This document shows positions 6,547-55,757 of a stretch of DNA of 64,000 bases, piece by piece. Location of the stretch: the IMG/VR virus record IMGVR_UViG_3300044712_000810, positions 62,001 through 126,000 of that record; one strand, written 5' to 3'. A program made the position numbers and the translations under genes. The notes beneath the pieces were generated by a model. That model saw nothing but the letters and a program-made list of their open reading frames with translations, made no database searches and was not told the origin of the DNA. Position 1 is the stretch's first letter. Each line of letters begins with the position of its first letter.

Positions 6547-7314
6547 TTAAAATTTAAAGACTAATCTTCTACCGATGACTTCAAGGAACTGTTCATTGAT
6601 AATATCATCGATAAATTTAACAACACAAGAATCACCATCACAAATGCGAAGATGATCATTTTCAATAATTGACATTACATCGGCGTTTTCACAAATCAAA
6701 GTCTTTGGATTCTCAGGAATAAAATCCCCTGCACTTTCTGGAAGGAAAGTAACAACACGAGCATTTTGATGTGATGGATTTGTAACAATGTCATAAGTAA
6801 TAGGCATGATTGGTTCAGTTACAACCAATGTACCATCTTGAAGTGGTTCAACTCCACCTAATGCGCGTAATGAGAAACCAATATTAATCTTGTCTTTCGT
6901 AATAAGATTTGCAAGATCAGGTCCTTTAAATCCAGAAAGAGTTTCGATTTCACCAATAATTTGGCCATTTTTCAACTCTAATTTTCTTAAAACAGCGGCG
7001 CAATTATTTAACTCAACAATTGCAGCTCTTTTCTTAAGAGTATCTGGATCTGAAGAAACAAACATTGGATGGTCTATCTCAAGAAGACATGATCTATTGT
7101 TAACTCTTGGAGCAAGTCTATTAACAATAGATTCACAAATTGCTTGTGAATAACGACGCTTATTAGCATTAAGAACATCTTGCTCTTGAAGAAGAGCTGA
7201 GAATGCTAATTTTGGTTTGCCACCAACTGTAGTTTCTTCAATAATCTTAATCTGATCGTATGGCACTACCGATGTCTGTTCAAAAATCAGATTGTACTTT
7301 CCGTTTGCTGGCAT
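6547..7314 (-). CDS. Prohead core protease (T4 gp21-like)
   Basis: NANKRRYS, LLEIDHP, IGFSLRALG, ITYDIVTNPSHQNA motifs. Confidence 0.9.
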   Translation of the reverse strand: MPANGKYNLIFEQTSVVPYDQIKIIEETTVGGKPKLAFSALLQEQDVLNANKRRYSQAICESIVNRLAPRVNNRSCLLEIDHPMFVSSDPDTLKKRAAIVELNNCAAVLRKLELKNGQIIGEIETLSGFKGPDLANLITKDKINIGFSLRALGGVEPLQDGTLVVTEPIMPITYDIVTNPSHQNARVVTFLPESAGDFIPENPKTLICENADVMSIIENDHLRICDGDSCVVKFIDDIINEQFLEVIGRRLVFKF

Positions 7315-14205: not shown

Positions 14206-14214
14206 GTATTACTC

Positions 14215-15933: not shown

Positions 15934-15947
15934 ATTATACTCCTAAA

Positions 15948-15969
15948 AGAGGGGGATTTCTCCCCCTCT
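15948..15969 (-). terminator. Terminator after tape measure gene
   Basis: AGAGGGGGA-GAAA-TCCCCCTCT then TTTT. Confidence 0.75.
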
Positions 15970-15973
15970 ATCT

Positions 15974-22047: not shown

Positions 22048-23925
22048 TTATCCACCAAAGAAAGGCATAAATGGTAAAACATCTGGATCATTACCATAAT
22101 TATTTTCACCAATATCATACATATCACGTTCGCCAGTTGTTATAAATAGATCTGGATTAAGCGATGCATTGCGAGGATTATATGTTCCTTTCTTAGGATC
22201 TGAAAGACCTATAAGCTCACGCATATTGGTTGAAAAGTTATTTGTAATTTCCCTATTTGATAAATTAAGCATTGGCATAATTTCCAAAGCTTTTCTTTTT
22301 CTTGTATATGCACAGAAACAGGCAGCCATAAATAAGTCACTAAAACTATTTGATCTGATTGTTCCTGCAGATGAACGTTCAATTGATGACATTTGGTTTA
22401 TTAATTCTTGCGATTTAATACACTTTGGATTTCCATCAATCGCTTCTTTTAAACAACCAATCATCATATCTTTTGAAATACCAGTAGTCATAATACCTGG
22501 TTCTTTATCATTATCTGAATACATAAATGGAGAATAATCAAATTCTCTAACATGATATAATAAGTGTTCAATTGGTGCAAGACCAATAGTGTTCTTTTCA
22601 ATTGCTAATATAATTCTTGGACCGACTTGACGATATAACCATTGAAATACTTCATGGATAATATCACCATATTTAGCAAAACTTCCAAGGCGAACTCCGA
22701 TTTCAGCAATCTGATTAAAGTCTTTAAAGCTAAATATTTGAATAGCGTTAAATGCACCTTTAATCGATCTAGCTGTATCTACACCAATTAAATAATAATC
22801 TAATGGATCAATATATTCAGAAAATACTTTCATTGTTGATCCATATTTAAATGGAACATTCTGAACTGAATTAACAGCTTCAAGTTTTGATAATTGATCG
22901 TCGTCGAAAATACAGTTAGATGTACCAACGAATATTAAGTCAAGTTCTTGGTTAATCTTACGTTGGTCTGAAAGTTCCTGACATTGTTCTTTATACCATT
23001 TTTCAGTTTTACGAGGATCTTCACTCCAATGATATTGAACTTTAATAAAACTGTTCTTACTTTCATCATGTGCAATTTCATCAATATCAACATCGGATCT
23101 CCAATCTTCATGTAAAGGATCATCTGGATCAGCAATAAACATATCTTCGGAATCTACAGCTTTTGACCAACGATCATAAAACCATTCACCGTTACCCGCG
23201 ATACCGTTTGGAGTACTTGTAACAAATTGAAAATATGGATAATTGTTTGATATTGCTTGGTCTTTAGCAGTTGCTAATGTTTGTTGTGCAGAACCGAAAA
23301 TTTCTCTCATGTGAGGTATGAATGCTGCTTCGTCGATATATAAACATGAACTTGTAAGTGAACGAGCAATAGTTGATGGGTGTGCGGTTGATGAAGGATA
23401 GAAAGAGTCAAGACGTGAACCATTACGAAGTTCAAGATATGTTAATCTTTCACTCTTTGTATTTTGTACACAAGTCCATCTTAACCAATCTGGCAAATTA
23501 TTAATAACAAACTTAACCATTGCTAAGTTTTTAATGGCAGGACCTTTTCTAAAGTTAAGAATAAGAGGTTTATTATATGGAAAGAAAATAGTGGACCATG
23601 CAAGAATACACGCAGCAATAGTGGACTTACCTAACTGACGTGAAGCCATGAATACACATTTATGATATCTATTTAATACGCGCACTACGCGTCTTAATTT
23701 CGGTCTTAACATTTCTTCTGAATATTGACGCATACCACCAGTTTCTTCTATATATACATAGTTTTGAATAAAATAAAGTGGATTACGTCTGCATTGAAGC
23801 CACTCAAGGGCATAATGATCATTAATTTTTATATTAGTATCTTTTGATAACATATCCAAACATTTTAAATCTGTTGTTGATAAATCATCATCTTCAATAC
23901 TTAAATCTATACTTTCACGAAGCAT
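22048..23925 (-). CDS. Terminase large subunit (T4 gp17-like)
   Basis: ASRQLGKST, LYIDEAAF, TSTPNG, nuclease IGVDTA and DLFMA motifs. Confidence 0.92.
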   Translation of the reverse strand: MLRESIDLSIEDDDLSTTDLKCLDMLSKDTNIKINDHYALEWLQCRRNPLYFIQNYVYIEETGGMRQYSEEMLRPKLRRVVRVLNRYHKCVFMASRQLGKSTIAACILAWSTIFFPYNKPLILNFRKGPAIKNLAMVKFVINNLPDWLRWTCVQNTKSERLTYLELRNGSRLDSFYPSSTAHPSTIARSLTSSCLYIDEAAFIPHMREIFGSAQQTLATAKDQAISNNYPYFQFVTSTPNGIAGNGEWFYDRWSKAVDSEDMFIADPDDPLHEDWRSDVDIDEIAHDESKNSFIKVQYHWSEDPRKTEKWYKEQCQELSDQRKINQELDLIFVGTSNCIFDDDQLSKLEAVNSVQNVPFKYGSTMKVFSEYIDPLDYYLIGVDTARSIKGAFNAIQIFSFKDFNQIAEIGVRLGSFAKYGDIIHEVFQWLYRQVGPRIILAIEKNTIGLAPIEHLLYHVREFDYSPFMYSDNDKEPGIMTTGISKDMMIGCLKEAIDGNPKCIKSQELINQMSSIERSSAGTIRSNSFSDLFMAACFCAYTRKRKALEIMPMLNLSNREITNNFSTNMRELIGLSDPKKGTYNPRNASLNPDLFITTGERDMYDIGENNYGNDPDVLPFMPFFGG

Positions 23926-23980: not shown

Positions 23981-24481
23981 TTATGGAGTGCCTTTTCCTT
24001 TACCTTTACCCTTTCCACCACCTTTCTTTCCACCAGGTGGTGGAGGCGTTGGAGCAGGACGTTGTGGCTTTGGCGATGCTAATGGACCCATAACTCTTGA
24101 TGCGTCACTAATTGTTGCTCTTTTTGTTTTTAAATTATGACGCATTGCATGTACTAAACCAACTCGTTTTTCACGAGCATCAGTATAATCAGCGCGAGCT
24201 TTTAATTTATCAGATTCAGATGCAGTTGGACTATTAATTGTATCTTGATGTTGTTTCATTGCATCTTTTAAACTCTTATGTTGTTGTTTCATTGCTGTAT
24301 GTTTTTCTTCCGCACTTCTTGCACCGCTTAAAACAAATTTACCAACTGCGCGTCTTGCTGTTGGAACTTTACTTTTAAGATGTGAAATACCCATAGCAGC
24401 ACCAACACCAGCAGCAAGTTTTGTATATGGACTTAAACTATCTTCATCTGTTTCATTTAAAATTAAATCTATAATTCCCAT
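23981..24481 (-). CDS. Basic hypothetical protein with Pro/Gly/Lys tail
   Basis: ILNE near N-terminus, AAGVGAAMG helix, C-terminal PAPTPPPPGGKKGGGKGKGKG. Confidence 0.7.
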   Translation of the reverse strand: MGIIDLILNETDEDSLSPYTKLAAGVGAAMGISHLKSKVPTARRAVGKFVLSGARSAEEKHTAMKQQHKSLKDAMKQHQDTINSPTASESDKLKARADYTDAREKRVGLVHAMRHNLKTKRATISDASRVMGPLASPKPQRPAPTPPPPGGKKGGGKGKGKGKGTP

Positions 24482-24489: not shown

Positions 24490-24975
24490 CTACATGTGGA
24501 ATACTGGAAGTGATTTAGAATTTGTTAAATTCTCTTCTGCTGTCCATTTATTTAATATCTCATTGACTTTACTAAATAAATAACCAATGGATACACCACC
24601 AAGTGCTGCACCTAAAAGTGCCAATGCAGCAACTAGAATACCTCCACCAGTAAGAGTTCCAACTGCCATACCAGCACCGGCACCAACAACCATGCCTGTT
24701 GGGACTCCATGAAGCCAACCATTTCTACGACCAACAGCTTTTGCTGCTTCTAAGTATGCTTTTACTTTTGGATCTTCAAATAAACTATTAAACGCTTTAT
24801 CTTCTTCTTTTGATAAATCACTAGTTAATTTCTTTTTACTCAAATCAATAAAACGTTGAACAGCAGAATCCTTAATCATATCCTTTAAACCTGAATCGAT
24901 TTCTTTTGGATGTGATGTTTCATGTAATGAATAAATCAATCCAGATTGTATAGCTTTATATAATTGTTCCATCAC
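24490..24975 (-). CDS. Glycine-zipper membrane protein
   Basis: GMVVGAGAGMAVGTLTGGGILVAALALLGAALGG. Confidence 0.7.
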   Translation of the reverse strand: MMEQLYKAIQSGLIYSLHETSHPKEIDSGLKDMIKDSAVQRFIDLSKKKLTSDLSKEEDKAFNSLFEDPKVKAYLEAAKAVGRRNGWLHGVPTGMVVGAGAGMAVGTLTGGGILVAALALLGAALGGVSIGYLFSKVNEILNKWTAEENLTNSKSLPVFHM

Positions 24976-33492: not shown

Positions 33493-34350
33493 TTATTTAC
33501 ACTTTAAACTACTAAATATAATTGTAAGTTCTTTGTCATCTATTTTATATATATCTTTATACTTAGTAAAAATATTATTCATAAGAGCACAAATTCTAGT
33601 CTTATCTTCAGGATGTTGTCTTGTAAAAACTAAATTAGCCATGGATGCAATCATTTTATATAGTAAACTTTCATTATGTTTCTTTTTACTTGCTTCAATT
33701 TCTAAATGAAATTTGAATAATACTTTTGCTAATTCGTCTCCATAACCATATTTCACTGCATAGTTATCAGCTTTATACTCGCCTGCATGTTCAAAAAATG
33801 TAAGCGTTCGACTAACAATCATTAAAGAACCGATCAAAAAAATTGCGCCTGGTAAATGAAACCAGTCTAAAACAAAATTGGAGGCCGCCCGAACTTTGTC
33901 GGACAGCCACCAGATATAATGTGCATAATTACCTGAATGTGCATACGCATGACCTAATTCATGTAATAGAATTGCGGTCATTTGACGCGATGAACATTTA
34001 TCAATTATTTTCTTACCGAAACAAATATATACAGAATCGATGTACTTAGATAAGTCGGCATCTGCTACTTGTAAATTTGCTTCAGGTTCTTTTTTCTGTT
34101 TTATTAATTTACCCATATCAAGAACAAATGTATTCTTATATATAGGTATAATCCATGAATCTGCTGTTGATTTTTTAACAAATACAACAACTTTTTCAAT
34201 ACCTGTAAATTCTTTAATATGTTGTACTAATTTATTTTTAGCATCAACGTCGCCAATATTAATTTTTAATTTATCGAAATCACCATCTATTTGTCTTAAA
34301 ATAGATGATCTTTCTTGTGCTACTTCTAATAAAATTTTATCATCATACAT
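33493..34350 (-). CDS. Zinc metallopeptidase, M48-like
   Basis: ILLHELGHAY (HExxH), EYKADNYA, RQHP..TRI. Likely start ATG 34350 after GGAG (track start 34458). Confidence 0.75.
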   Translation of the reverse strand: MYDDKILLEVAQERSSILRQIDGDFDKLKINIGDVDAKNKLVQHIKEFTGIEKVVVFVKKSTADSWIIPIYKNTFVLDMGKLIKQKKEPEANLQVADADLSKYIDSVYICFGKKIIDKCSSRQMTAILLHELGHAYAHSGNYAHYIWWLSDKVRAASNFVLDWFHLPGAIFLIGSLMIVSRTLTFFEHAGEYKADNYAVKYGYGDELAKVLFKFHLEIEASKKKHNESLLYKMIASMANLVFTRQHPEDKTRICALMNNIFTKYKDIYKIDDKELTIIFSSLKCK

Positions 34351-34363: not shown

Positions 34364-35329
34364 TTATTTAACTGGACAATTCGAAGAATATAAACAAAAG
34401 AAACATGCTTTTTTATTAATAAAAGGATCTTGAGGAGATGGTATTTTATTATTATCAATATACCAATTGATACACTTTAACTTCTGGTCAATGAAATCCA
34501 TATATGGTTTCGGATCAAAAGTAGATAAGTCAAGTGTAAGACTTTTAATAAAGTAAAATGGATCTGACTTTGATGACAATGCCTTTTTAATAGTGGTTAC
34601 GGCCGCTAAAGCTTCACCAATATTTTCAACATCAGCAGCAATAATATCGTGTGCGATATATAAAAATTGAATTTTCTTAATATCGTATTTTTTATATTTT
34701 GGTTTTGGTGAACGCGTAACAATTTCAGGATTACGAATTTCATCAATATAATTTTCTAAAATGTATTTATAAACCATCGTTTGATAAAAGTCTGGAGTTC
34801 TAGGCTTTTGACTTCTTATAATGGATTCATAATCTTTATATGTACATGTTTTAATTTCAACCAACACGTCAGTACCAATTAAACAGTCAATACGACCACT
34901 GAAACGAACACTTGGAACTTTCATTGATACTTCTGTTTCTGTAAATTGATCTGTATTACATTGAATAAAATCATGAACAGCAGAACCGATTGTATTTCTC
35001 ATAAATATTGGAAGCCATTTATCTGCATAATTCTCAACAGGCACATTTAAAATTTTATTAACAATACTTAGGATGCAACCGTGGGCAACATCGTGACCAC
35101 TTATATTCGATGCAACTTCCATATACGCTTTGTTTTTGGCCTGAGATTTATGATATAATTCTCTTGAAAAATCTTTAATATCAAATAATGCACCACTTGG
35201 AAGATCATCAGATTCTTCCATCACCATCTGTTGTGATTGTTCCGGTGTTGCTGTATTTACAGATTTTTGTGTTGTGATGTTTTCATTTGTATTTTCAATA
35301 ATATCTAAAATTCCATTAAATTCACTCAA
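34364..35329 (-). CDS. Cas4-like PD-(D/E)XK exonuclease
   Basis: GC..GSAVH, GRID..LVEIKT, QTMVY, C-terminal CFFC-x5-C cysteine cluster. Confidence 0.75.
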   Translation of the reverse strand: MSEFNGILDIIENTNENITTQKSVNTATPEQSQQMVMEESDDLPSGALFDIKDFSRELYHKSQAKNKAYMEVASNISGHDVAHGCILSIVNKILNVPVENYADKWLPIFMRNTIGSAVHDFIQCNTDQFTETEVSMKVPSVRFSGRIDCLIGTDVLVEIKTCTYKDYESIIRSQKPRTPDFYQTMVYKYILENYIDEIRNPEIVTRSPKPKYKKYDIKKIQFLYIAHDIIAADVENIGEALAAVTTIKKALSSKSDPFYFIKSLTLDLSTFDPKPYMDFIDQKLKCINWYIDNNKIPSPQDPFINKKACFFCLYSSNCPVK

Positions 35330-40197: not shown

Positions 40198-40212
40198 TAT
40201 TTCTATATGAAA
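40198..40212 (-). promoter_or_regulatory. Conserved 15-bp motif TTTCATATAGAAATA
   Basis: Exact copy on minus strand, about 45 bp upstream of the 40152 start. Confidence 0.7.
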
Positions 40213-40223
40213 CTAGAGAAAAT

Positions 40224-40850
40224 TTACTTTCTGTTAAATCTTACTAATAAATCCTTATTAAATTTTTTACCCATATTGAAAAAATACGTCCTTTGAAATA
40301 CTCCAGATGGAATTTTAAAATATCGTATGAATGGCGAAATACAATATTTACCAATGGCTTCGTATGTTCTCTTGGTATAAATATCCAAGTTACTGTCACC
40401 AACAATGACAATATGTATACACTCGGACACATCAACAATATTTTCGTAAAGAAATTTATTAACTTCAGCATCTTGTTCGATTACATTTCTATTTTTTAAT
40501 TCAACATTGGTTAATGGAAATTTCATATCAATAGGTCTCGTATTAAATACATAATATCTATCTTCAACTAATTCTACCGTGAAATGCCAAGGAAGCATAT
40601 TATGTTCAAACTGACCATATAACTCACGATATCGTTGATTAATTTCATGCAAATCTATTCTATGAGTATCTATTCTAGGCTTTGGTCTAATTGGAAACGC
40701 GAAATGATTATAGGAGTCCGATATAATTAAGCCTTTTGGTTTAGTATCTATTTTATTAATAACGCTAGAATCATCTTTACTTATACTAATTCGTTGCTGT
40801 CCAGCTTCATCAGCAAAGAAATTGTTAATATCTTCATACATTACAAGCAT
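40224..40850 (-). CDS. Amidase_2 (T7 lysozyme-like) fold protein, probably catalytically degenerate
   Basis: PWHFTV..YVFNTRP..CIHIVIVGD..TKRTYEAI parallels GYHFVI..GRP..SIGICLVG..TxAQ; first Zn-ligand His replaced (IISDS). ATG 40850 follows GGAG. Confidence 0.5.
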   Translation of the reverse strand: MLVMYEDINNFFADEAGQQRISISKDDSSVINKIDTKPKGLIISDSYNHFAFPIRPKPRIDTHRIDLHEINQRYRELYGQFEHNMLPWHFTVELVEDRYYVFNTRPIDMKFPLTNVELKNRNVIEQDAEVNKFLYENIVDVSECIHIVIVGDSNLDIYTKRTYEAIGKYCISPFIRYFKIPSGVFQRTYFFNMGKKFNKDLLVRFNRK

Positions 40851-40964
40851 GTTCGGCTCCAATAAAAAGTTGGAAGGTCAAATTACAGAAATCCAATAAA
40901 CAATTATATTATAAGGCAAACTTAAACTGTGGGCATTCCACAAAATCTTTGACCTTCCCACAAA

Positions 40965-41141
40965 CTATTTTTTATAACGACGTTTCATGTCTTCTTTTTT
41001 CATTTCTTTTAAATGTTCTTTTATTGCTAATGCTGTTCTGGCAGATAATCCACCGATCGCAGCACCAATAACAAAACTTTTACTATCCATATCTTCAATT
41101 GATTTTTTAATACTTTCGAATTCATTGATTATACATATCAT
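40965..41141 (-). CDS. Small protein with GxxxG helix (not in ORF track)
   Basis: MICIINEFESIKKSIEDMDSKSFVIGAAIGGLSARTALAIKEHLKEMKKEDMKRRYKK*. Confidence 0.55.
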   Translation of the reverse strand: MICIINEFESIKKSIEDMDSKSFVIGAAIGGLSARTALAIKEHLKEMKKEDMKRRYKK

Positions 41142-41142
41142 A

Positions 41143-41361
41143 TTAATGCTCTTCTATTTTATGACTATGTACATGTTTAGCTAATTTAGCTAAAGCTCTC
41201 ATATGACCATTAAGTTGTTCTTTAGACATCTTATGACCATGTAATTGAATTCTTTTATTAATTCCATTAACTAAATTTCTTGCACTATTTGGATGTAACA
41301 CACGCTCAAATATCAGACCACTATTAATGGCAGTTTCTAATAAGGTCATAATGACCTCCAT
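41143..41361 (-). CDS. Hypothetical protein
   Basis: 72-aa ORF abutting neighbours. Confidence 0.55.
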   Translation of the reverse strand: MEVIMTLLETAINSGLIFERVLHPNSARNLVNGINKRIQLHGHKMSKEQLNGHMRALAKLAKHVHSHKIEEH

Positions 41362-41978
41362 TATCGATCTTTATTATTTTGTTTTGCTATATCTTTTTTA
41401 ACTGCGTCAGGTTTTGCAAAACCACCTAATGGAGTAATTGCTGATATTGTTCTTCCCAGTTTTCCATAACCCATTTGTTTAGCGGCAGCATGTCTATCTT
41501 TTATACCTTTAGCAATATACCCAATACCAGCGCCGACTTTTGCACCAGCAATAGCACCTGCTGCAGCGCCAGCTTTCATCATCTCTGGATCACCATGCCA
41601 TGCAGCAGCTCCTAATGAACCAAGTGCAGCAGCACCAATACCTGCACCAATACCTGCATGTTTTAATGTTTGTAATGAATTAGATTTATCTAAAAGTGCA
41701 CCAACACGATGAGATGCTTTTTTAGTATCTATATCTTTATTTGGATTATCTACTGCGTCCTTACCAATATAATGACCAGCAACCATTGTCGCGGGCGCAA
41801 CAACTGGAACTAAACTTCCAATCATTTTACCCCAACCAGATCCGACATGTTTCATTTTTAATTTTTGATCGTGGTCATTTTTTTCAATTTCATTAAGTAT
41901 TAAGCCTACTGAAATTGCTTCGAATAATTTTTCCATTTTTATATCCTTTAATGTCCCATTACGGCCATGAAATTCCAA
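41361..41978 (-). CDS. Glycine-zipper protein
   Basis: AGIGAGIGAAALGSLG..AGAAAGAIAGAKVGAGIG. Confidence 0.7.
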   Translation of the reverse strand: MEFHGRNGTLKDIKMEKLFEAISVGLILNEIEKNDHDQKLKMKHVGSGWGKMIGSLVPVVAPATMVAGHYIGKDAVDNPNKDIDTKKASHRVGALLDKSNSLQTLKHAGIGAGIGAAALGSLGAAAWHGDPEMMKAGAAAGAIAGAKVGAGIGYIAKGIKDRHAAAKQMGYGKLGRTISAITPLGGFAKPDAVKKDIAKQNNKDR

Positions 41979-42682
41979 AGACCATGAATTAAAATACCTA
42001 GCTTATAACCTGTATATTTTTTATTTTCATCTTTAGGATATTTATCATAATAATATTTCTGTATAAGTGTGGTTGTCGCATGTAAACCAACAGCTAAAAG
42101 TCTAGCAACTGTTGCTGTTACAATATCCATTCCAGCACCTAATAATCTAACCATATACATAGAAAATTCAGCAACGTTAAATACAACAAAAAATGTACCT
42201 GTAAAACCACCTTGAATAGATATCATCTTTGCTGTTTCTTCAGTTAATGGTGCAACAAATATTGAACCCATAGCATAACCTAACGACGGTGGTAAGCCAA
42301 TTATCATACAAACAACAGCAAGAAAATTATGAAGAAATGTATTTATGATTAAAATAATAGAAAGTAAAACTAATGATTTTCCAATTTTATTAAATGCAAC
42401 TTCAATACTAGATTCTTGAACTGCCGCTTGAAAATTTCGTTTTAATATAATACCAATATCGGCTTTATCTTTTGATTGTTTAAATTCAACAACAGCACGT
42501 TTAGAATATTTCTTAGCAATATTCTCAAGTTTGGAAGTTTCAACATTTCCATCTTTTAACTGTTGTGTTATTTTTTTAATTTTATTATCTTTCTGTTCAA
42601 TTAATGATTCTTTAAATGAACCAATTGAAAACGATTCAAGAAAAAGTTCATTAGTATACATATTTTTGGCGACCGAATACAT
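41948..42682 (-). CDS. PrsW-family (CPBP-type) intramembrane protease
   Basis: Four family motifs in order: APLTEETAK (EExxK), FNVAE (FxxxE), LHATT (H), IHGLWN (HxxxN); several TM helices. Confidence 0.7.
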   Translation of the reverse strand: MYSVAKNMYTNELFLESFSIGSFKESLIEQKDNKIKKITQQLKDGNVETSKLENIAKKYSKRAVVEFKQSKDKADIGIILKRNFQAAVQESSIEVAFNKIGKSLVLLSIILIINTFLHNFLAVVCMIIGLPPSLGYAMGSIFVAPLTEETAKMISIQGGFTGTFFVVFNVAEFSMYMVRLLGAGMDIVTATVARLLAVGLHATTTLIQKYYYDKYPKDENKKYTGYKLGILIHGLWNFMAVMGH

Positions 42683-42697
42683 TTTTTAACTTTCTCC

Positions 42698-42714
42698 AAT
42701 TTGATATACAAATT
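42698..42714 (+). promoter_or_regulatory. Dyad AATTTG-ATATA-CAAATT, compensatory variant of the 15-bp motif
   Basis: C>G and G>C changes keep the symmetry; upstream of the plus-strand ORF at 42737. Confidence 0.5.
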
Positions 42715-42736
42715 AGTTATTAAAGGAGGTAATAAC

Positions 42737-42862
42737 ATGTTACGATCTGCAATACAAGCGGTCATTGCGTTAATCGTCATATGTACACTTATCTACATGA
42801 TAAATGAAAACCCAATCATACAATGGATAATAAATCAAATATCCAAGATTGGGCAGTTTTAA
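42737..42862 (+). CDS. 41-aa membrane peptide (not in ORF track)
   Basis: AAAGGAGG RBS; MLRSAIQAVIALIVICTLIYMINENPIIQWIINQISKIGQF*; terminator directly after. Confidence 0.7.
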   Translation: MLRSAIQAVIALIVICTLIYMINENPIIQWIINQISKIGQF

Positions 42863-42866
42863 AAAG

Positions 42867-42888
42867 AATGGGGGCTTTCGCCCCCATT
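42867..42888. terminator. Bidirectional terminator
   Basis: AATGGGGGC-TTTC-GCCCCCATT with T-tracts on both strands. Confidence 0.8.
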
Positions 42889-42894
42889 TTAATA

Positions 42895-43095
42895 TTAATC
42901 AAACTTTGTTTTACCAAATGATCCTAAGATTGCTTTTTGTGGAGGATTAAATCTTCCCATTTCAACCCCAGGAGGCATCTTCTTTTTAAGACTTGAAGGC
43001 ACACCATCAGATGATGCGCCACCAATTGGTGCTTTCGCAAAATCAGCTGATGTATCTTCGTCTAAGTAATATAATTGTTCGAAGATACTTAACAT
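42895..43095 (-). CDS. Hypothetical protein
   Basis: 66-aa ORF. Confidence 0.55.
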   Translation of the reverse strand: MLSIFEQLYYLDEDTSADFAKAPIGGASSDGVPSSLKKKMPPGVEMGRFNPPQKAILGSFGKTKFD

Positions 43096-43099
43096 AACA

Positions 43100-43384: not shown

Positions 43385-43404
43385 TCCGTTATTTATTTTG
43401 TTTA

Positions 43405-44514: not shown

Positions 44515-44535
44515 TATAATATCCTCCAAAGATAT

Positions 44536-45968: not shown

Positions 45969-47204
45969 ATGGCAAAGAATGAACAAACTGAAAACAGAGT
46001 CGAAATGCCATTGGCAGATCTGATTCAAAACTTTGTCGTTCCGAACTGCTATTTGCAGTGCGACAAAGACACGTCAGATAAAGGCGGCGTGGCAATTCCA
46101 TACATCGTGTCGAAGCCTGGCGCCGGTAAGACATCAGTTATCGAGGCGCTTTGCAAGAACAATGGATGGGGACTCATGTCCGTTCACTTTGCCCTCAAGC
46201 CTATCGAAGAGCTTGGTGGCATTCCGAACTTCACCAAAGTTCACATCAACGGCAAGGAAGTTTCAGGTACCGAATGGACCGTTACCGATATGGTAACGAA
46301 ACTGTGGGAGATGCACAACGAAACCAAAGAGGTTTTGGCGAAGGACGGGTCAACCGTTACCGAACCCAAGTACAAAATCATCATACTGCTGTATGACGAT
46401 GCTCACCTTTGCGGTCCCGGACACATGGCATTCTTCTACGAACCTTTCACCGAAAGAACAATTCGTGGGCACAAGTTGCCTCCGAACTGCGCACAAGCAA
46501 TGGCAGGAAACGACAGCAACAAAGCAGGCGCAAAAGCCTTCTTCTCCGCTATCACCAACCGTTGCGCTCGTCTCTATGCAAGAGCAGAATTCAAACCTTG
46601 GAAAGAAATGTTCGCTCTTCCCAAGCAGGTTCACCCGGCAGTTGTTTCTTTCCTCGGAAAGGACAACTATCAGTTCCAGTTCTTCCATGGCGAAGAAGTT
46701 CAGGATTCTCCTTGGGCATCACCCAGATCCTGGACTCGTCTCGCAAACTTCATCGAGGCGTATGAAAAGTGGAATGGTGGAAAAGCAATGCCTGCTTCCG
46801 AACTGCGCTTCTACGCTGAAGCTCACGTCGGAAAATCTGCAGGAAACGAATTTTCCAACTACTATTCCGTATTCACCAAATTCAATCTGGATCGTGATCT
46901 CGATAACTTCAAGAACTTCCAACTTCCCTCAAACGATATCGACAAATACGCATTCGCATTTGCGATCACCGCGCATTACTGCGGCAACAAGGAACTGAGA
47001 AAGGTCAAGAGCGAAAACTTCGCTCACATCCTTTTCCGTTACCTTGAAGACTGCCGTGAAGTCGGCATCGTCATGATGAAGGATATCATGTCCCTCGAAA
47101 AGATCGTCAAAGATGAAAACATCTTCGGCGCTGTCGCGAAGCATCTGGAAAAACTGAAGCCCACTTGCGTTACCGCGCTGTTGCAAGAAGTCGCTCGCCT
47201 GTAG
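45969..47204 (+). CDS. MoxR-like AAA+ ATPase
   Basis: Walker A SKPGAGKT, GGIP, Walker B LLYDD, AGN, AITNR, ASPRSW. Confidence 0.85.
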   Translation: MAKNEQTENRVEMPLADLIQNFVVPNCYLQCDKDTSDKGGVAIPYIVSKPGAGKTSVIEALCKNNGWGLMSVHFALKPIEELGGIPNFTKVHINGKEVSGTEWTVTDMVTKLWEMHNETKEVLAKDGSTVTEPKYKIIILLYDDAHLCGPGHMAFFYEPFTERTIRGHKLPPNCAQAMAGNDSNKAGAKAFFSAITNRCARLYARAEFKPWKEMFALPKQVHPAVVSFLGKDNYQFQFFHGEEVQDSPWASPRSWTRLANFIEAYEKWNGGKAMPASELRFYAEAHVGKSAGNEFSNYYSVFTKFNLDRDLDNFKNFQLPSNDIDKYAFAFAITAHYCGNKELRKVKSENFAHILFRYLEDCREVGIVMMKDIMSLEKIVKDENIFGAVAKHLEKLKPTCVTALLQEVARL

Positions 47205-47212
47205 GATAATAC

Positions 47213-48553
47213 ATGAGTGCGAATCTGGCGAAAGTCAAAAAAATAATCGAACAAGCCAGATTGAAGCTGATCCGTAAAGAATACTTATTCTTCGGTCTCT
47301 TCTGCGGCAAGTTCGTGTGGAAGCATTACGATTTCGGTGATGAAATGAAGGATATCGAAGGTTGTGTCTATCTTCCGAACGACCCAAAGAATCCTGATAA
47401 AGAAGTGATGGATAACGCAATCCATCTCAATGATAGATTCATTTCAAAAGACGATTATACATATTTGAATCTTTGCGATCTTGTACTGCATGAATCGCTA
47501 CACATCATAAACAAACACGGAATACGTCGCGGATCGAGAGATCCAAAACTTTGGAATATTGCAGGTGACCATGTCATCGACAGATTCCTCCGTGATTTGA
47601 ATATGACTAAACCATATCATAGGTGGAACGTAATTCCAGAACTCGACAAAGCACTTCCAAAGTGTTCTGCCGAGGAAGCCTATATGTGGCTTGAAAAAAA
47701 TCAAAAGAAATTCACAATATCACAAGATCCTGCATCAGGACAAATTACTATTACAGATGGGCAGGGAAATACATTCCATGTCAATCCATCGCAAGGTGGT
47801 GTGACATCTGGTAATGTTGATCCCAAAGTAAAACAAATGGTTGAAGAACTTGTTGCAGGCGCCAGAGCAATTCACGAGTCATCGAAAGATCGTGGTGTTG
47901 GTTCCGCAGCAATTTCTGCATATCTTGATGATGTTCTTAAGGTTGTGATTCCATGGCAAGAACTGCTTGAAATCGCGATCAAAACAAATATCATAATGAA
48001 ACCGGACGATTATGGTTGGGCAAACCCCAACAAACGCCTCAGATGTCATGGCCTTGTGCTTCCTGGAAGCATAATGACAGAAACAAATGAAGGCGTTGGA
48101 ACTCTCATAGTTCACGTAGACACTTCTGGATCAGTTAACGACACACAGCTTAAAGAAGCTGCTGGAATAATCTGCGAATCTATGAGATATTTCAAAACAA
48201 TTAAACTCATTACTGCCGACTGGAACATTCAACAGGAAGTTGATTTCGACAGCGACAGTATTAGTGATTTCCTTAACTTCTGTCAAAAAGAAGGATTTAA
48301 AGGTCGTGGCGGCACATCACATAAACCAACGTTTGATCGAATCAATGAAATCTGGGAAGACAACATTGATGATCTCTCGATGGTAATTTCAATAACCGAT
48401 GGATATTCTGATATTGAACAAATATATACAGTATATCCATTCATAACAAACCACGTTCCGTTGGTTTTCCTTCTCAATGGCGGATCGAGGGAACTAAATC
48501 TCAATCCTGATATTGGGAAAATAAAACAAATCGTCATGGACGATGCAAAATAA
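47213..48553 (+). CDS. Metallopeptidase-VWA protein (DUF2201-like)
   Basis: LHESLH (HExxH), WNIAGDHVID, VDTSGSV MIDAS motif, GRGGT, ITDG. Confidence 0.85.
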   Translation: MSANLAKVKKIIEQARLKLIRKEYLFFGLFCGKFVWKHYDFGDEMKDIEGCVYLPNDPKNPDKEVMDNAIHLNDRFISKDDYTYLNLCDLVLHESLHIINKHGIRRGSRDPKLWNIAGDHVIDRFLRDLNMTKPYHRWNVIPELDKALPKCSAEEAYMWLEKNQKKFTISQDPASGQITITDGQGNTFHVNPSQGGVTSGNVDPKVKQMVEELVAGARAIHESSKDRGVGSAAISAYLDDVLKVVIPWQELLEIAIKTNIIMKPDDYGWANPNKRLRCHGLVLPGSIMTETNEGVGTLIVHVDTSGSVNDTQLKEAAGIICESMRYFKTIKLITADWNIQQEVDFDSDSISDFLNFCQKEGFKGRGGTSHKPTFDRINEIWEDNIDDLSMVISITDGYSDIEQIYTVYPFITNHVPLVFLLNGGSRELNLNPDIGKIKQIVMDDAK

Positions 48554-49479: not shown

Positions 49480-49959
49480 TTATTTTTTCAGTTTTGAAAG
49501 ACGCTTACGAAGAGCAACAGCACCAAGACCAGCAGCTAAAGCTGAACCAGCGGCATACTTTGCCCATGGATGATCTTCATCAAAATCCTTAGCAGCAGTG
49601 CCAGCATCTTCAGCAGCACGTTTTGCTTTTGTTGCAAGACTACCACGATCTGGGCCAGGAGTATCTAAATCTTCAGCCTTACGTTTAATAGCTTTACCAG
49701 CATCACGGGCTACACGACCACCTTTCTTTGCAAGTTCTTCAGCTTTTTCTTTAGCTTCACCAGCAAGTTCTTTGCCACCTTTTATTACTCTATCTACATC
49801 TTTCTTGTGATCAGAAACATCTTCCATTGGATCGCCTGAAGATGATTCATTAAGTGCCTTATTAAGTTCTTCTTTTACGCCCATATCGGTTTCCCCATTT
49901 CCTTTCTCAATGTTTTCTTGAAGAGATTCCATGATAATTTTGTTAACATCAAATGACAT
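49480..49959 (-). CDS. Protein with C-terminal hydrophobic helix and basic tail
   Basis: Ends PWAKYAAGSALAAGLGAVALRKRLSKLKK; ATG 49959 after GGAGGA. Confidence 0.7.
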   Translation of the reverse strand: MSFDVNKIIMESLQENIEKGNGETDMGVKEELNKALNESSSGDPMEDVSDHKKDVDRVIKGGKELAGEAKEKAEELAKKGGRVARDAGKAIKRKAEDLDTPGPDRGSLATKAKRAAEDAGTAAKDFDEDHPWAKYAAGSALAAGLGAVALRKRLSKLKK

Positions 49960-49991
49960 AGTATTATCCTCCACTATAATTTATTTATTAT

Positions 49992-50540
49992 TTAACCTGC
50001 TCTACGACGTGAAAGTAACCAACCTGCTCCAAGACCAGCTGCTGCTGCTAATGGTGCAGGAGAATCCTCTAATGCTTTATAACCTTTTGAGGCTATATTT
50101 TTTACACTATCATATACACCTGGATTTTCACCTGTTACAGGCGATGTTAACGGTTTAGCAATCGCACTGGGCATTCCTTGAGGAGTTGCATCACGATTAC
50201 CAATTCCTTCTGATTGTTTAATATTTCCAGGATTAGGTACTGGTTGAGTTGGTGTAGGCATTGTTTGACCTCCAGCCTTTACTTGATTGTCTGCAACTCT
50301 TTGTGCTCCTGGAATTGCAGTATTTTGTGGAACTTGATTATCTATTGATCTGACTGATCCAGGAACTGCACTTGGACGTTGCACAAAGTTTGGATCATTT
50401 TGCAAATTCGTTGGTGTTACTCCAGGATTAGGAGAACCAGTCATTGCACCACGACCACGAGCTAAATCTTGTTTTTTCAAAAAATCAAATGTTTCTTGCG
50501 CTCCAGGCGATAAAGAACCTCCACCAATTGGTCCAGCCAT
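49992..50540 (-). CDS. Pro/Gln-rich protein with C-terminal PAP-helix-RRR tail
   Basis: Ends KGYKALEDSPAPLAAAAGLGAGWLLSRRRAG. Confidence 0.7.
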   Translation of the reverse strand: MAGPIGGGSLSPGAQETFDFLKKQDLARGRGAMTGSPNPGVTPTNLQNDPNFVQRPSAVPGSVRSIDNQVPQNTAIPGAQRVADNQVKAGGQTMPTPTQPVPNPGNIKQSEGIGNRDATPQGMPSAIAKPLTSPVTGENPGVYDSVKNIASKGYKALEDSPAPLAAAAGLGAGWLLSRRRAG

Positions 50541-50542
50541 AA

Positions 50543-51118
50543 TTAGCCTCCTTGACGACGACGGCTAAGGAGATATGCGGCACCAAGTCCACCGGCAGCA
50601 GCTAATGGCGCTGGTGAATCTTCTAATGCTTTAAAACCTTTGGCAGCAATATTTTTAACATTACCATATACTGAATCATCATGTTGCACTGGTGCTGCTT
50701 GTGCCACTTGTTGTGGTGAAGCAACTGGAGCAACATCAGCCGGATGATTAACTTTTACACCACTTTGTTGAGCATGATATTCAGCTTTAGCTTTCTGTGC
50801 TACTGCTTCAGCTTCTGCTTTTTTTGCTTTTGTTAAAGCTTCTGCTTGTTCTTGTGCACTTTGTTGTTCGTGTTTTTGTAATGGTGCGTTTTTATCAGGA
50901 TTTGCTCCACGACCACGCATCATTTCTTGTTCAGCAGGTGTTGGTACTGGTTGTTGATCATTTTTCTTATTCATAGCATTATAAATACCATAACCAAGAC
51001 CACCGGCAGCACCAGCTCCAAGACCAACCATTGCAACTTTTTTTCCAGTTCCAGTTCCAGATTTAGTAGTATCAACCGCAATCTCATACATATTTTTTAA
51101 TGCATTTAAAACGCTCAT
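50543..51118 (-). CDS. Paralog with C-terminal PAP-helix-RRR tail
   Basis: Ends KGFKALEDSPAPLAAAGGLGAAYLLSRRRQGG; also has an N-terminal GLGAGAAGGLG helix. Confidence 0.7.
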   Translation of the reverse strand: MSVLNALKNMYEIAVDTTKSGTGTGKKVAMVGLGAGAAGGLGYGIYNAMNKKNDQQPVPTPAEQEMMRGRGANPDKNAPLQKHEQQSAQEQAEALTKAKKAEAEAVAQKAKAEYHAQQSGVKVNHPADVAPVASPQQVAQAAPVQHDDSVYGNVKNIAAKGFKALEDSPAPLAAAGGLGAAYLLSRRRQGG

Positions 51119-54680: not shown

Positions 54681-55757
54681 TTAAATATTTGGATTAAATT
54701 TAAAACCTGAAGTAAGTACTTGTATACAAGCATCTACAATGTCATCATCTAACTTGATTCCTCGTTCTTCATTAATTATTGACATAGCCTTATCAATACC
54801 AAGACCAGCACGATACGGTCTATGATTTGTAACTGCTTCAACAACATCAGCAACTGAAATTATTCTAGATAAGAAATGTATTTCATCACCTTTCAGTCCT
54901 AATGGATAACCGGAACCATCTAATCTTTCATGATGTTGATGTATAATTTCATGAACCGGTATCGTATATTTAAATGGAATCTTTTCAACTATTTTAGCAC
55001 CAACTTCTGAATGTAATTTAATAAAATTCATCTCATGTTCAGTTAATTTTCCTGGACGGACTAAGATCTCTGTTGGTGTATAAAATTTGCCAATATCATG
55101 AAGTATTGAAGCTATCTCGAGGCATTCCATATCTTCATCATTTAATTTAAACAATTTCCCAATTTCAAGAGAAAGATGTTTAACTCTCATTTGATGACCA
55201 TATGTATATGGATCTTTAATTTCACCCATTTTCGAAAGTGTTTCAACAGTTGAAACTATAACATCTTTCGAATAATGATTTGTTTTTGTTAATCGCATTT
55301 CAGTATCTTCTAAAACTATAATCGCTCGTTTTAAAGCATCTATATATTTTTTTTCTTTAGATAAATCAACAATAATTCCATAAATTAAATCATTATGTAA
55401 TAACATTGAATCTTTAGCTTCAAATTCTTTACCTGTTTTAAAATTAATAAAAACAGACTCGAGTGAATAGTATTTATTCTTTTTTAATTCTTCAATTGCT
55501 GTAAGTCGAACATTTGAATCGACATATACTTTCGATGAATTAAAATCGTAATCTATCATATGATTAACATCATTATAACCAAATAACTCACAAAAAAATG
55601 AGTTAGCATATAATATATCACCATCAATTGATGTAACATAAACACCAATCTCGGCATTATCAAAAACATCGAAAAACTTTTTTGGGATGCATTTATGTTC
55701 GCAATTAACATTAAGAACATCTCGAAGTTTTTCTAACAACTGTTTTTTATTTTGCAT
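54681..55757 (-). CDS. PAS + HD-GYP cyclic dinucleotide phosphodiesterase
   Basis: PAS FDNAEIGVY..DGDILYANSFFCELFGY; KDPYTYGHQMRV, LHDIGK, HHERLDGSGYPLGL, ADVVEA. Confidence 0.9.
   Translation of the reverse strand: MQNKKQLLEKLRDVLNVNCEHKCIPKKFFDVFDNAEIGVYVTSIDGDILYANSFFCELFGYNDVNHMIDYDFNSSKVYVDSNVRLTAIEELKKNKYYSLESVFINFKTGKEFEAKDSMLLHNDLIYGIIVDLSKEKKYIDALKRAIIVLEDTEMRLTKTNHYSKDVIVSTVETLSKMGEIKDPYTYGHQMRVKHLSLEIGKLFKLNDEDMECLEIASILHDIGKFYTPTEILVRPGKLTEHEMNFIKLHSEVGAKIVEKIPFKYTIPVHEIIHQHHERLDGSGYPLGLKGDEIHFLSRIISVADVVEAVTNHRPYRAGLGIDKAMSIINEERGIKLDDDIVDACIQVLTSGFKFNPNI

What the first reader, a model, noticed from the sequence alone, without database searches (positions are those of the whole stretch)
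41948..42682. Phage-encoded PrsW-type intramembrane protease; candidate processing enzyme for the helix-tailed proteins
Seen: EExxK, FxxxE, H and HxxxN motifs in order within TM segments, inside a cluster of small GxxxG-helix genes; the N-terminus carries FLE/LIE motifs like putative packaged proteins. Established: PrsW cleaves anti-sigma factor RsiW, and related CPBP proteases have been proposed as sorting enzymes. Inference: either host envelope-stress manipulation or a phage 'sortase' for the PAP-helix-RRR and glycine-zipper proteins.
Basis: partly seen in the sequence, partly recalled or inferred. Interest (0 to 1): 0.62.

Follow-up and report, generated by a model that had tools for sequence, protein, structure and literature searches.

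The report
Jumbo-phage PrsW-type membrane protease

Summary
The ORF at 41948..42682 (-) is a real gene for a PrsW-family intramembrane protease. It scores above the Pfam PF13367 cut-off. All four catalytic motifs are invariant in 60 relatives. The AlphaFold model has pLDDT 91.6, and its five-helix core superposes best on APH-1, a solved member of the same superfamily.

It belongs to a phage-specific subfamily with 468 cluster representatives. These lie on viral contigs next to terminase, tail-fibre and other virion genes. None was found in cultured phages or in bacterial genomes.

The subfamily adds a basic, roughly 85-residue helical domain and an acidic leader of about 16 residues. The leader ends in L/I-x-E: the third-last residue is L or I in 55/60 and the last is E in 55/60. 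That is the cleavage and capsid-targeting signature of T4-type prohead proteases, and the phage encodes such a protease at 6547..7314.

The gene heads a four-gene operon bounded by terminators and encoding small membrane-active proteins.

My best reading (about 0.35) is a head-packaged, injected membrane protease acting mainly on a host target.

The helix-tailed proteins are real and resemble ElaB/YqjD tail-anchored proteins. They co-occur with the protease only in two syntenic genomes and are absent from a complete, more distant genome. The 'phage sortase' idea is therefore weakly supported.

The parts
41948..42682 (-). PrsW-family intramembrane protease gene (244 aa, P0001). An RBS-like GGAGA lies 10 nt before the ATG at 42682. 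A database gene call starts at Met8 (237 aa).
42635..42682 (-). Codons 1-16: acidic leader ending in F14-L15-E16, the family-conserved L/I-x-E and the inferred prohead-protease or capsid-targeting site.
   Evidence: T4 rule from PMC9026906
42383..42634 (-). Codons 17-100: basic helical N-terminal domain (17 K/R, net +6, pI 9.7). Predicted cytoplasmic. Its last helix runs on into TM1.
41951..42382 (-). Codons 101-244: five-helix catalytic core carrying EExxK, FxxxE, H and HxxxN. Superposes on APH-1B (Z 11.1, rmsd 2.9 A over 142 residues).
42867..42888 (-). Intrinsic-terminator hairpin (9 pairs, 6 G-C, T run) that closes the upstream unit. It marks the 5' boundary of the PrsW operon. It is palindromic, so it may also stop the small plus-strand ORF.
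42737..42862 (+). 41-aa single-pass membrane ORF with GGAGGT 6 nt before its ATG. It diverges from the PrsW start. An ORF of the same size, kind and position exists in L006.
   Evidence: no sequence similarity
41361..41936 (-). Glycine-zipper protein (191 aa from the ATG at 41936, 11 nt after the PrsW stop). Its N-terminal leader is of the LFEAIxVGLILNE type.
41143..41349 (-). 68-aa protein with the same leader type (MTLLETAINSGLIFE) and a His-rich C-terminus.
40965..41141 (-). 58-aa protein with an N-terminal IINEFE motif, one GxxxG helix and a basic tail. It is the last gene of the operon.
40927..40943 (-). Terminator-like hairpin at the 3' end of the four-gene operon.
6547..7314 (-). T4 gp21-type prohead protease: Peptidase_S77 32 bits (cut-off 27), S80 25.8 bits (cut-off 23.4), phrog_207 E 4e-21. 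It is the inferred enzyme acting on the L/I-x-E leaders. It lies next to the major head protein (4960..6510), whose N-terminus reads MKTLFEN.
49480..51118 (-). Three adjacent genes (49480..49974, 49992..50540, 50543..51118) for the helix-tailed family, with the tail pattern [DE]-x-P, small-residue helix, basic cluster. They have weak, sub-threshold ElaB/YqjD-like matches.

Best explanation
Shown:
- The gene encodes a member of the PrsW/CPBP/APH-1 superfamily with every catalytic motif intact.
- It belongs to a phage-specific subfamily built as: acidic leader of about 16 aa, basic three-helix domain of about 85 aa, then a minimal five-helix core.
- It is the first gene of a four-gene unit between two terminator hairpins. 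The unit lies in a minus-strand block that also holds terminase, head protease, major head protein, tape-measure and tail-fibre genes.

Inferred, step 1 (about 0.5-0.55): the leader, ending in the family-conserved L/I-x-E, is a T4-type propeptide or capsid-targeting sequence. The protein would be loaded into the prohead and trimmed after E16 by the phage's gp21-like protease. The basic mature form would then travel with the DNA.

Inferred, step 2: at the next infection it is ejected and inserts in the host cytoplasmic membrane together with the small glycine-zipper and GxxxG proteins of its operon. There it cuts a membrane-anchored protein near the cytoplasmic face.

Inferred, step 3: the target is more likely a host protein, such as an anti-sigma factor, a stress or defence sensor, or a tail-anchored protein, than a phage protein. 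No phage partner is conserved across the subfamily.

Confidence that it is an active PrsW-type protease is about 0.9. Confidence in the whole chain is about 0.35.
For: Family, motifs and fold:
- PF13367 above cut-off, and in 55/60 relatives.
- Invariant P145, E148, K152, E172, H201, H233 and N237.
- AlphaFold pLDDT 91.6.
- Best solved match is APH-1B at Z 11.1, about 3 Z units above the next row.
- ESM Atlas neighbours are PrsW clusters. The nearest has 80 members, and all of the 25 members with a known taxon are Uroviricota.

Phage-specific distribution:
- 468 representatives at E<=1e-3.
- 10 IMG/VR loci.
- No match in 50,697 cultured-phage records.
- None found in the species-representative genomes, though that was a pattern-limited search.

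Virion-module context in several lineages:
- The window itself.
- L006 is syntenic.
- L008-L010 place it next to TerL.
- L011 places it next to tail fibres.

Leader:
- The third-last residue is L 39, I 16, F 3, V 2 of 60. The last residue is E in 55 of 60.
- The site lies 4-34 residues from Met1 (median 16).
- K/R content is 3% in the leader against 20% in the next domain.
- Family mean net charge is -2.7 for the leader and +6.5 for the domain.

The enzyme with that specificity is encoded in the window.

T4 precedents:
- gp21 cuts after L/I-x-E, and 10-20-residue CTS propeptides load diverse internal proteins (PMC9026906, PMC3012670, PMC5694885).
- SPN3US gp47 is a processed ejection protein with a predicted TM helix.

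Shared leaders on unrelated cargo:
- In L006, at least 7 genes start MIS[IL]SYLFE or a close variant. They include a Peptidase_C39 protein and a DUF5661 protein.
- In G000, four proteins share a leader (0-3 of 200 shuffles reach the score) with unrelated bodies in five of the six pairs. The exception is a pair that both carry glycine-zipper regions.

Against: - There is no experimental or expression evidence. The one run holding this DNA is a DNA run.
- A protein with five membrane helices is an unlikely capsid cargo. Known packaged proteins with TM segments have one or two.
- The L/I-x-E is followed by further conserved hydrophobic positions, so it could be the structural start of the N-terminal domain rather than a cleavage site.
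- Genome-wide enrichment of generic leader patterns in this phage is weak: 32 against 21.8 +/- 4.1, and 24 against 15.9 +/- 3.8.
- The window protein's own leader is not significantly like its neighbours' leaders: 25 of 200 shuffles reach the score.
- No S77 protease was detected in five other records carrying relatives, one of them complete.
- The T4 late-promoter motif is not enriched.
Confidence: 0.35

Rival explanations
1. The protease is not packaged. It is made late in the infected cell and inserts co-translationally (N-terminus in, C-terminus out). It acts there on host membrane proteins, for example to manipulate envelope stress or anti-sigma signalling, remove defence sensors, or tune membrane state and lysis timing. 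The conserved L/I-x-E is then a structural or regulatory element of the N-terminal domain.
For: - The PrsW precedent is site-1 cleavage of the membrane anti-sigma factor RsiW (PMC3482391).
- Polytopic proteins normally insert co-translationally.
- The positive-inside pattern fits an ordinary N-in, five-TM membrane protein.
- A second membrane-type protease, Peptidase_M48 at 33493..34350, is in the same block.
- Residues after E16 are also conserved.
Against: - It does not explain why an acidic leader free of K/R, with exactly the gp21-type motif at CTS distance from Met1, is kept across a family with 25% mean column identity.
- It does not explain why neighbours with unrelated folds carry similar leaders.
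- No sigma/anti-sigma pair and no host are known.
Confidence: 0.3
2. The protease is a phage 'sortase' or maturation enzyme. It cuts the C-terminal [DE]-x-P / helix / basic-tail signal of the 49480, 49992 and 50543 products, and possibly the glycine-zipper proteins.
For: - A CPBP protease, myxosortase MrtX, cleaves a tripartite C-terminal signal (PMC11980579).
- The tails are a real, conserved paralogous family: 3 copies in G000 and 6 in G001.
- They score just under the MYXO-CTERM-type models: 49992 scores 15.7 bits on TIGR03382 against a cut-off of 15.85, and 50543 scores 14.2 bits on TIGR03901 against a cut-off of 20.
- By the positive-inside rule the catalytic residues sit in the cytoplasmic half of the bilayer. 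That is where the [DE]-x-P boundary of an N-in tail anchor would lie (inference).
- A glycine-zipper gene is adjacent to PrsW in both G000 and G001.
Against: - Co-occurrence is limited to two syntenic genomes, so it is not independent evidence.
- The same profile finds no tails in a complete 241-kb genome or in four fragments that hold PrsW relatives. The profile does recover all 9 of its own training copies.
- There are only 3 candidate substrates, no signal peptides and no invariant Cys.
- The tails resemble ElaB/YqjD (DUF883) anchors, which need no sorting enzyme.
- No glycine-zipper neighbour occurs in the other lineages.
- The complex prediction gave no support, which is not evidence against.
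Confidence: 0.15
3. The protease is the leader peptidase of the cluster. It removes the N-terminal amphipathic leaders of the neighbouring small proteins at the membrane, as CPBP/Abi-type enzymes do for peptide precursors in Firmicutes (recalled knowledge, not checked here).
For: - It sits among genes with conserved N-terminal leaders.
- The CPBP superfamily includes bacteriocin- and peptide-processing enzymes by name (PMC11980579).
Against: - The leader motif, hydrophobic-x-Glu, is the known specificity of gp21-type serine proteases, and one is encoded here.
- The protease itself and the major head protein carry such N-termini.
- Leaders also sit on soluble enzymes: the C39 peptidase and DUF5661 proteins.
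Confidence: 0.07
4. The protein has a non-proteolytic role, such as membrane immunity or superinfection exclusion, or acts as an APH-1-like scaffold.
For: - Some CPBP members act as immunity or non-catalytic regulatory proteins (for example the abstract of PMC13692083).
- The best solved structural match is the non-catalytic APH-1.
Against: All catalytic positions are invariant across 60 diverged relatives. That argues for retained catalysis.
Confidence: 0.05

Closest known systems
Bacillus subtilis PrsW (YpdC), Pfam PF13367
   Same: The profile matches above the cut-off. It has the same four motifs (EExxK, FxxxE, H, HxxxN) in membrane helices, and PrsW clusters are its nearest neighbours in ESM Atlas.
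   Different: - It has only five helices in about 140 residues, whereas 'most representatives bear eight' (PMC3482391).
- It adds a basic helical N-terminal domain and an acidic L/I-x-E leader.
- It is phage-encoded in a virion-gene block.
- No anti-sigma substrate is known.
- No NCBIfam or PHROG model matches it.
T4 internal proteins and Alt with capsid-targeting sequences (IPI-III)
   Same: - A short N-terminal leader ends in L/I-x-E.
- A gp21-family protease is in the genome.
- The mature part is basic.
- Leaders are shared by unrelated cargo encoded in runs of small genes (PMC9026906, PMC3012670).
   Different: The cargo here is a polytopic membrane enzyme, whereas known T4 cargo is soluble. 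Packaging and cleavage are only inferred.
SPN3US gp47 and similar giant-phage ejection proteins
   Same: It is a head protein processed by the prohead protease and carries a predicted TM helix, proposed to act at the host membrane (PMC5694885).
   Different: gp47 has one TM helix, no protease domain and a long propeptide cut at A-x-E.
Myxosortase MrtX and other CPBP (Rce1-like) proteases
   Same: Same superfamily. MrtX is an intramembrane enzyme that cuts next to a membrane helix, and its tripartite C-terminal substrates resemble the phage tails in outline (PMC11980579).
   Different: - Motifs 1 and 2 here are of the PrsW type (EExxK, FxxxE).
- There is no PF02517 hit at E<=1.
- The tails lack the Cys motif and signal peptides, and there are few of them.
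APH-1 (gamma-secretase subunit)
   Same: It is the best solved structural match for the core: Z 11.1, rmsd 2.9 A, 142 residues.
   Different: Sequence identity is 13%. APH-1 is a non-catalytic eukaryotic scaffold.
PrsW domains fused to polymorphic toxins
   Same: PrsW is used there as a membrane conduit or releasing peptidase for conflict proteins (PMC3482391).
   Different: In those proteins PrsW is the N-terminal domain with a toxin fused to its C-terminus. Here it is C-terminal, with no toxin domain detected.

Membership tests
PrsW family (PF13367) | Profile match above the curated cut-off | tested here: met
   25.9 bits against a cut-off of 23.5, E 8.2e-6. 55 of 60 relatives match, best E 5.4e-9.
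PrsW family (PF13367) | Four motifs in order within membrane helices: EExxK, FxxxE, H, HxxxN | tested here: met
   E148 E149 K152, F168 E172, H201 and H233 N237 are invariant or at least 90% conserved in 60 sequences. All lie in model helices.
PrsW family (PF13367) | Typical polytopic architecture (most members have eight helices) | tested here: not met
   Five helices in the core plus a soluble N-terminal domain. Core-only relatives of 136-167 aa also exist. This is a minimal variant. It does not exclude membership.
PrsW family (PF13367) | Proteolytic activity on a membrane-anchored substrate | not testable with these tools
   Needs expression of the wild type against E148A/E149A together with candidate substrates.
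PrsW/CPBP/APH-1 fold superfamily | Structural similarity to a solved member | tested here: met
   APH-1B 8oqz_C at Z 11.1, rmsd 2.9 A over 142 aa, against 8.3 for the next row. Foldseek with the whole model found nothing.
CPBP / Rce1-like (PF02517) | Profile match | tested here: not met
   No PF02517 hit at E<=1. Motifs 1 and 2 read EExxK and FxxxE, the PrsW forms.
T4-type capsid-targeted, prohead-processed internal protein | Leader of 10-20 residues ending in L/I-x-E | tested here: met
   F14-L15-E16 in this protein. Across the family the third-last residue is L/I in 55/60, the last is E in 55/60, and the median distance from Met1 is 16. The rule is from PMC9026906.
T4-type capsid-targeted, prohead-processed internal protein | gp21-family prohead protease in the same genome | tested here: met
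   Window 6547..7314: S77 32 bits (cut-off 27), S80 25.8 bits (cut-off 23.4), phrog_207 E 4e-21.
T4-type capsid-targeted, prohead-processed internal protein | Same leader shared by unrelated cargo proteins of the genome | tested here: inconclusive
   - Clear in L006, where the PrsW leader is most like those of its neighbours.
- Clear for four other G000 proteins.
- The window protein's own leader is not significantly like its neighbours' (25 of 200 shuffles).
- Generic patterns are only weakly enriched genome-wide.
T4-type capsid-targeted, prohead-processed internal protein | Presence in virions with a trimmed N-terminus | not testable with these tools
   Needs virion mass spectrometry. The phage is known only from a rhizosphere metagenome.
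Sortase-like system (CPBP enzyme plus C-terminal tripartite signal, as in MrtX / MYXO-CTERM) | Substrates with a signature motif, TM helix and basic cluster that pass the curated models | tested here: not met
   The tripartite outline is present. Both tails score below cut-off: 49992 scores 15.7 bits on TIGR03382 (cut-off 15.85) and 50543 scores 14.2 bits on TIGR03901 (cut-off 20). There is no invariant Cys.
Sortase-like system (CPBP enzyme plus C-terminal tripartite signal, as in MrtX / MYXO-CTERM) | Substrates are exported proteins (N-terminal signal peptide), usually dozens per genome | tested here: not met
   There are three proteins only. None has an N-terminal hydrophobic signal on reading the sequences or in the hydropathy scan.
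Sortase-like system (CPBP enzyme plus C-terminal tripartite signal, as in MrtX / MYXO-CTERM) | Enzyme and signal co-occur across genomes | tested here: inconclusive
   Both are present in G000 and its syntenic relative G001. The signal is absent from the complete genome G005 and from 4 fragments that hold the enzyme. The tail profile was built from two genomes only.
ElaB/YqjD (DUF883) tail-anchored proteins (for the helix-tailed genes) | Profile match | tested here: inconclusive
   PF05957 scores 25.1 bits against a cut-off of 25.4 for L018:2231-2629. PRK10132 gives E 9e-4 for window 49480. The other copies have no hit.

The most novel reading that the evidence does not exclude
A polytopic intramembrane protease is a capsid-targeted internal protein. 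It would be loaded into the prohead through a T4-like leader, trimmed by the prohead protease, and injected with the DNA. It would travel with a set of glycine-zipper and helix-plus-basic-tail proteins whose tails let them enter the host membrane from outside. This would be the first membrane enzyme known to be delivered by a phage head, as part of an injected 'membrane toolkit'.
Probability: 0.3. Interest if true: 0.8.

Novelty: new variant of a known kind. Interest (0 to 1): 0.55.

Why it matters
PrsW/CPBP proteases are widespread, but few have known substrates, and I found no functional study of a phage-encoded one.

This subfamily is large (468 cluster representatives) and confined to uncultured, mostly large phages. 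It combines an intact catalytic core with the signature of head-packaged proteins.

If the packaging inference holds, three things follow:
- The kinds of cargo a phage can inject would extend to membrane enzymes.
- It would point to host membrane proteins, such as sensors, anti-sigma factors and tail-anchored proteins, as early infection targets.
- It would give a compact five-helix model enzyme for a family with little structural data.

If the inference fails, the result is still a well-defined phage auxiliary membrane protease with a testable set of candidate substrates.

Tried and rejected
- **Cultured-phage searches.** megablast of 40000-46000 and tblastn of the protein against 50,697 phage records gave no match.
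- **Other profile libraries.** PHROGs and NCBIfam have no family for the protease.
- **Sequence search of solved structures.** phmmer against PDB sequences found nothing.
- **Word-index protein search.** It found only one relative. The exhaustive HMMER search was needed.
- **Loci scans.** The first viral-contig scan used two sequences and was too narrow. The 60-sequence alignment was too diverse for the loci tool. The genome-contig scan found no relatives, but its sensitivity is limited by the search patterns.
- **Foldseek with the whole model.** No significant match. VIA-align found APH-1.
- **Complex prediction.** The core (residues 95-244) was run with the 62-residue tail of the 50543 product. 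Result: 'no answer', score 0.00, controls not run. This counts neither for nor against binding.
- **S77 protease in other records.** None was found in five other records with relatives. The result is uninformative because four are fragments and the model is weak.
- **T4 late promoter TATAAATA.** 16 matches against 12.75 expected, so not enriched. The sigma-70-like scan is also at chance.
- **Generic leader patterns genome-wide.** Only z of about 2-2.5, so I do not rest the leader argument on them.
- **Leader similarity to neighbours.** Not significant for the window copy.
- **A guess that the 40224..40862 product is an amidase or endolysin, which would make this a lysis cassette.** No Pfam or Atlas support, so dropped.
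- **tRNAs.** None in the window.
- **Read laying.** Not used, because the only run is a DNA run kept as contigs.
Full report
**What the sequence is.** The window is bases 62001-126000 of a 314,837-bp virus record with direct terminal repeats, rated complete, at 33% G+C. The one public run that holds this stretch is a rhizosphere metagenome. The large terminase is only about 24% identical to T4-like terminases. Its best matches are an uncultured 484-kb phage and Flavobacterium phages.

Almost all genes from position 1 to 45875 and from 48557 to 64000 lie on the minus strand. They include:
- terminase (22048..23925);
- a gp21-type head protease (6547..7314);
- a major head protein (4960..6510);
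- an 1809-aa tape-measure/transglycosylase protein;
- tail-tube and tail-fibre proteins;
- some replication genes.

**The observation.** The ORF at 41948..42682 (-) encodes 244 residues.

Pfam's PrsW model matches above its curated cut-off: 25.9 bits against 23.5, E 8.2e-6. A search of 1.84 billion cluster representatives gave 468 relatives at E<=1e-3 and 202 at E<=1e-10. Nearly all are 230-330 residues long and align over almost the whole length.

In an alignment of 60 of them (mean column identity 25%), P145, E148, K152, E172, H201, H233 and N237 are invariant. E149, F168 and R194 are at least 90% conserved. Fifty-five of the 60 hit PF13367 themselves.

An AlphaFold model built on that alignment has mean pLDDT 91.6. 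It shows three N-terminal helices, the last of which (73-127) runs on into the first of five membrane helices. Foldseek found nothing with the whole model. An exhaustive structural alignment put the gamma-secretase subunit APH-1B first: Z 11.1, rmsd 2.9 A, 142 residues, model residues 95-244, about three Z units above the next row. APH-1 is described as a distant relative of PrsW and CPBP proteases (PMC3482391). ESM Atlas neighbours are PrsW clusters. The nearest has 80 members, and all of the 25 members with a known taxon are Uroviricota.

**A phage-specific subfamily.**
- No cultured phage in 50,697 records encodes a relative.
- No PHROG or NCBIfam model matches.
- A pattern-based scan of species-representative genomes found none.
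- Ten IMG/VR viral contigs do encode relatives.

One of those contigs, L006 (record G001, 48 kb), is syntenic with window 35435-48553, and the protease sits in the same slot. In other lineages the gene lies next to the large terminase (L008-L010) or tail-fibre genes (L011). A short contig with relative P0004 has it upstream of a 1314-aa protein with a faint head-fibre hit.

The subfamily differs from typical PrsW, which mostly has eight helices (PMC3482391). It has a minimal five-helix core and a basic N-terminal domain of about 85 residues. In this protein that domain has 17 K/R, net +6 and pI 9.7. The family mean is +6.5. Core-only relatives of 136-167 residues also exist.

By the positive-inside rule, the N-terminal domain and the loop at 213-228 (5 K/R) are cytoplasmic, and the other loops carry no K/R. 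This is an inference. It places the catalytic residues in the cytoplasmic half of the bilayer.

**The N-terminal leader.** This is the feature I think matters most. At the position of F14-L15-E16, the 60 relatives have:
- L (39), I (16), F (3) or V (2) at the third-last position;
- any residue at the second-last;
- E in 55 of 60 at the last;
- a small or polar residue after it.

The site lies 4-34 residues from Met1, with a median of 16. The stretch before it has 3% K/R and 20% D/E. The following domain has 20% K/R.

This matches what is established for T4. gp21 cuts after L/I-x-E with few other determinants. The 10-20-residue propeptides of internal proteins are capsid-targeting sequences that load unrelated cargo into the prohead (PMC9026906, PMC5694885, PMC3012670).

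The phage encodes a gp21-type protease in this same window: Peptidase_S77 32 bits (cut-off 27), S80 25.8 bits (cut-off 23.4), phrog_207 E 4e-21. It lies next to a major head protein whose N-terminus reads MKTLFEN.

Shared leaders on unrelated bodies are plain in the relative L006. At least seven consecutive or nearby small genes begin MIS[IL]SYLFE or a close variant. Among them are a Peptidase_C39 protein (E 3.5e-18) and a DUF5661 protein. The L006 PrsW homologue begins MLAVADYFED, much like its glycine-zipper neighbour MIPVADLF.

In the window's own genome, four proteins share a leader of the type LFEAIxSGLI..E. Between 0 and 3 of 200 shuffles reach the observed scores. Their bodies are unrelated in five of the six pairs. 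The exception is a pair that both carry glycine-zipper regions.

**Weak points of the leader argument.**
- The window protein's own leader is not significantly like those.
- Generic leader patterns are only weakly enriched genome-wide, z about 2-2.5.
- Residues after E16 are also conserved, so the motif could be a structural start of the domain.
- Five membrane helices make an awkward capsid cargo. The nearest precedent, SPN3US gp47, has a single predicted TM helix.

**The local unit.** A strong hairpin with a T run at 42867-42888 ends the upstream genes, and another at 40927-40943 follows ORF 40965..41141. Four genes lie between them:
- the protease;
- a 191-aa glycine-zipper protein that starts 11 nt after the protease stop (41361..41936);
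- a 68-aa protein (41143..41349);
- a 58-aa protein with one GxxxG helix and a basic tail (40965..41141).

All four have hydrophobic-x-Glu motifs near the N-terminus.

Just upstream and divergent lies a 41-aa single-pass membrane ORF (42737..42862, +) with a canonical GGAGGT ribosome-binding site. L006 has an ORF of the same size, kind and position, with its own terminator, although the two show no detectable sequence similarity.

**The helix-tailed proteins.** These are real and form a family:
- three adjacent genes in the window (49480..51118);
- six in the syntenic relative;
- each with [DE]-x-P, a helix of small residues and a basic cluster;
- several also carry N-terminal leaders.

Their closest described look-alikes are the ElaB/YqjD (DUF883) tail-anchored proteins, but only at sub-threshold scores. 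They also fall just below the MYXO-CTERM-type sorting-signal models. The 49992 product scores 15.7 bits on TIGR03382 against a cut-off of 15.85, and the 50543 product scores 14.2 bits on TIGR03901 against a cut-off of 20.

Myxosortase is now shown to cleave such signals (PMC11980579). The defining features of such systems are mostly missing here:
- there are three substrates, not dozens;
- there are no signal peptides;
- there is no invariant cysteine.

A profile of the tails recovers all nine known copies but finds none in a complete 241-kb genome or in four fragments that encode a PrsW relative. No glycine-zipper neighbour is conserved outside the two syntenic genomes. A complex prediction of the core with one tail returned no verdict.

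I therefore rate the sortase model at about 0.15. No phage partner is conserved across the subfamily, which is my main reason to favour a host target.

**Verdict.** This is a new, phage-specific variant of a known protease family. The family assignment and the anatomy are well supported. The mechanism is inferred. My preferred chain is capsid-targeted, trimmed by the prohead protease, injected, then acting on a host membrane protein. It stands at about 0.35. The main rival, at about 0.30, is an ordinary late-expressed membrane protease acting in the infected cell.

The literature held here contains no functional study of a phage PrsW homologue. A PrsW domain has been noted in RNA viruses (PMC7508674).

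Noticed in passing
window 42737..42862 (+); L006 9857..9979 (-): A 40-41-aa single-pass membrane ORF with its own ribosome-binding site and terminator lies divergently about 20-55 nt from the PrsW start. It runs against the direction of the whole late block. The arrangement is the same in both syntenic genomes, yet there is no detectable sequence similarity apart from a TM helix followed by NPI[IL]. It could be a regulator, inhibitor or substrate of the protease.
   Followed up: partly
window 33493..34350 (-): A second membrane-type protease sits in the same block: Peptidase_M48 (HELGH motif), E 2.8e-9, 37.5 bits against a cut-off of 20.3. From Met37 its N-terminus reads MYDDKILLEV, which again contains L-x-E.
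   Followed up: partly
window 54681..55757 (-): A PAS plus HD_5 (HD-GYP-like) protein, E 1.7e-38. It is a possible cyclic-nucleotide phosphodiesterase encoded between tail-fibre genes.
   Followed up: no
window 45969..48553 (+): A two-gene plus-strand island, ATPase (phrog_1297) and HNH endonuclease (phrog_1314), at 45% G+C inside a region of about 30% G+C. It is conserved at 39-44% identity in L006.
   Followed up: partly
L006 6824..9813 and 12560..16168; L018 1340..6254: A run of more than a dozen small genes share N-terminal leaders (MIS[IL]SYLFE and variants) on unrelated bodies. The bodies include a Peptidase_C39-like cysteine protease (8716..9276) and a DUF5661 protein (6824..7258). The arrangement looks like a large T4-style internal-protein locus.
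   Followed up: partly
window 41361..41936, 41143..41349, 24490..24975; G000:127707..127967: Four proteins of this genome share the leader [LF][FLY][EK]AIxSG[LM]I..E. Their bodies differ except where two carry glycine zippers. 24490..24975 and 23981..24481 form a second glycine-zipper pair next to the terminase.
   Followed up: partly
G000:C1:19354-19689 (+), outside the window: A second, weaker Peptidase_S77-like ORF (21.3 bits, 130 aa). It recalls the diverged prohead-protease paralogue reported in SPN3US-like giant phages.
   Followed up: no
window 49480..51118 and L018 2228..6254: The basic tails after the C-terminal helix are long, up to 19 residues with 8 Lys in L018. That fits poorly with an N-in tail anchor made in the cytoplasm. 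It would fit proteins that enter the membrane from outside.
   Followed up: no
window 34364..35329 (-): A 321-aa ORF with a C-terminal Cys cluster. By eye it looks like a PD-(D/E)xK or Cas4-like nuclease, but there is no Pfam hit at E<=0.01.
   Followed up: no
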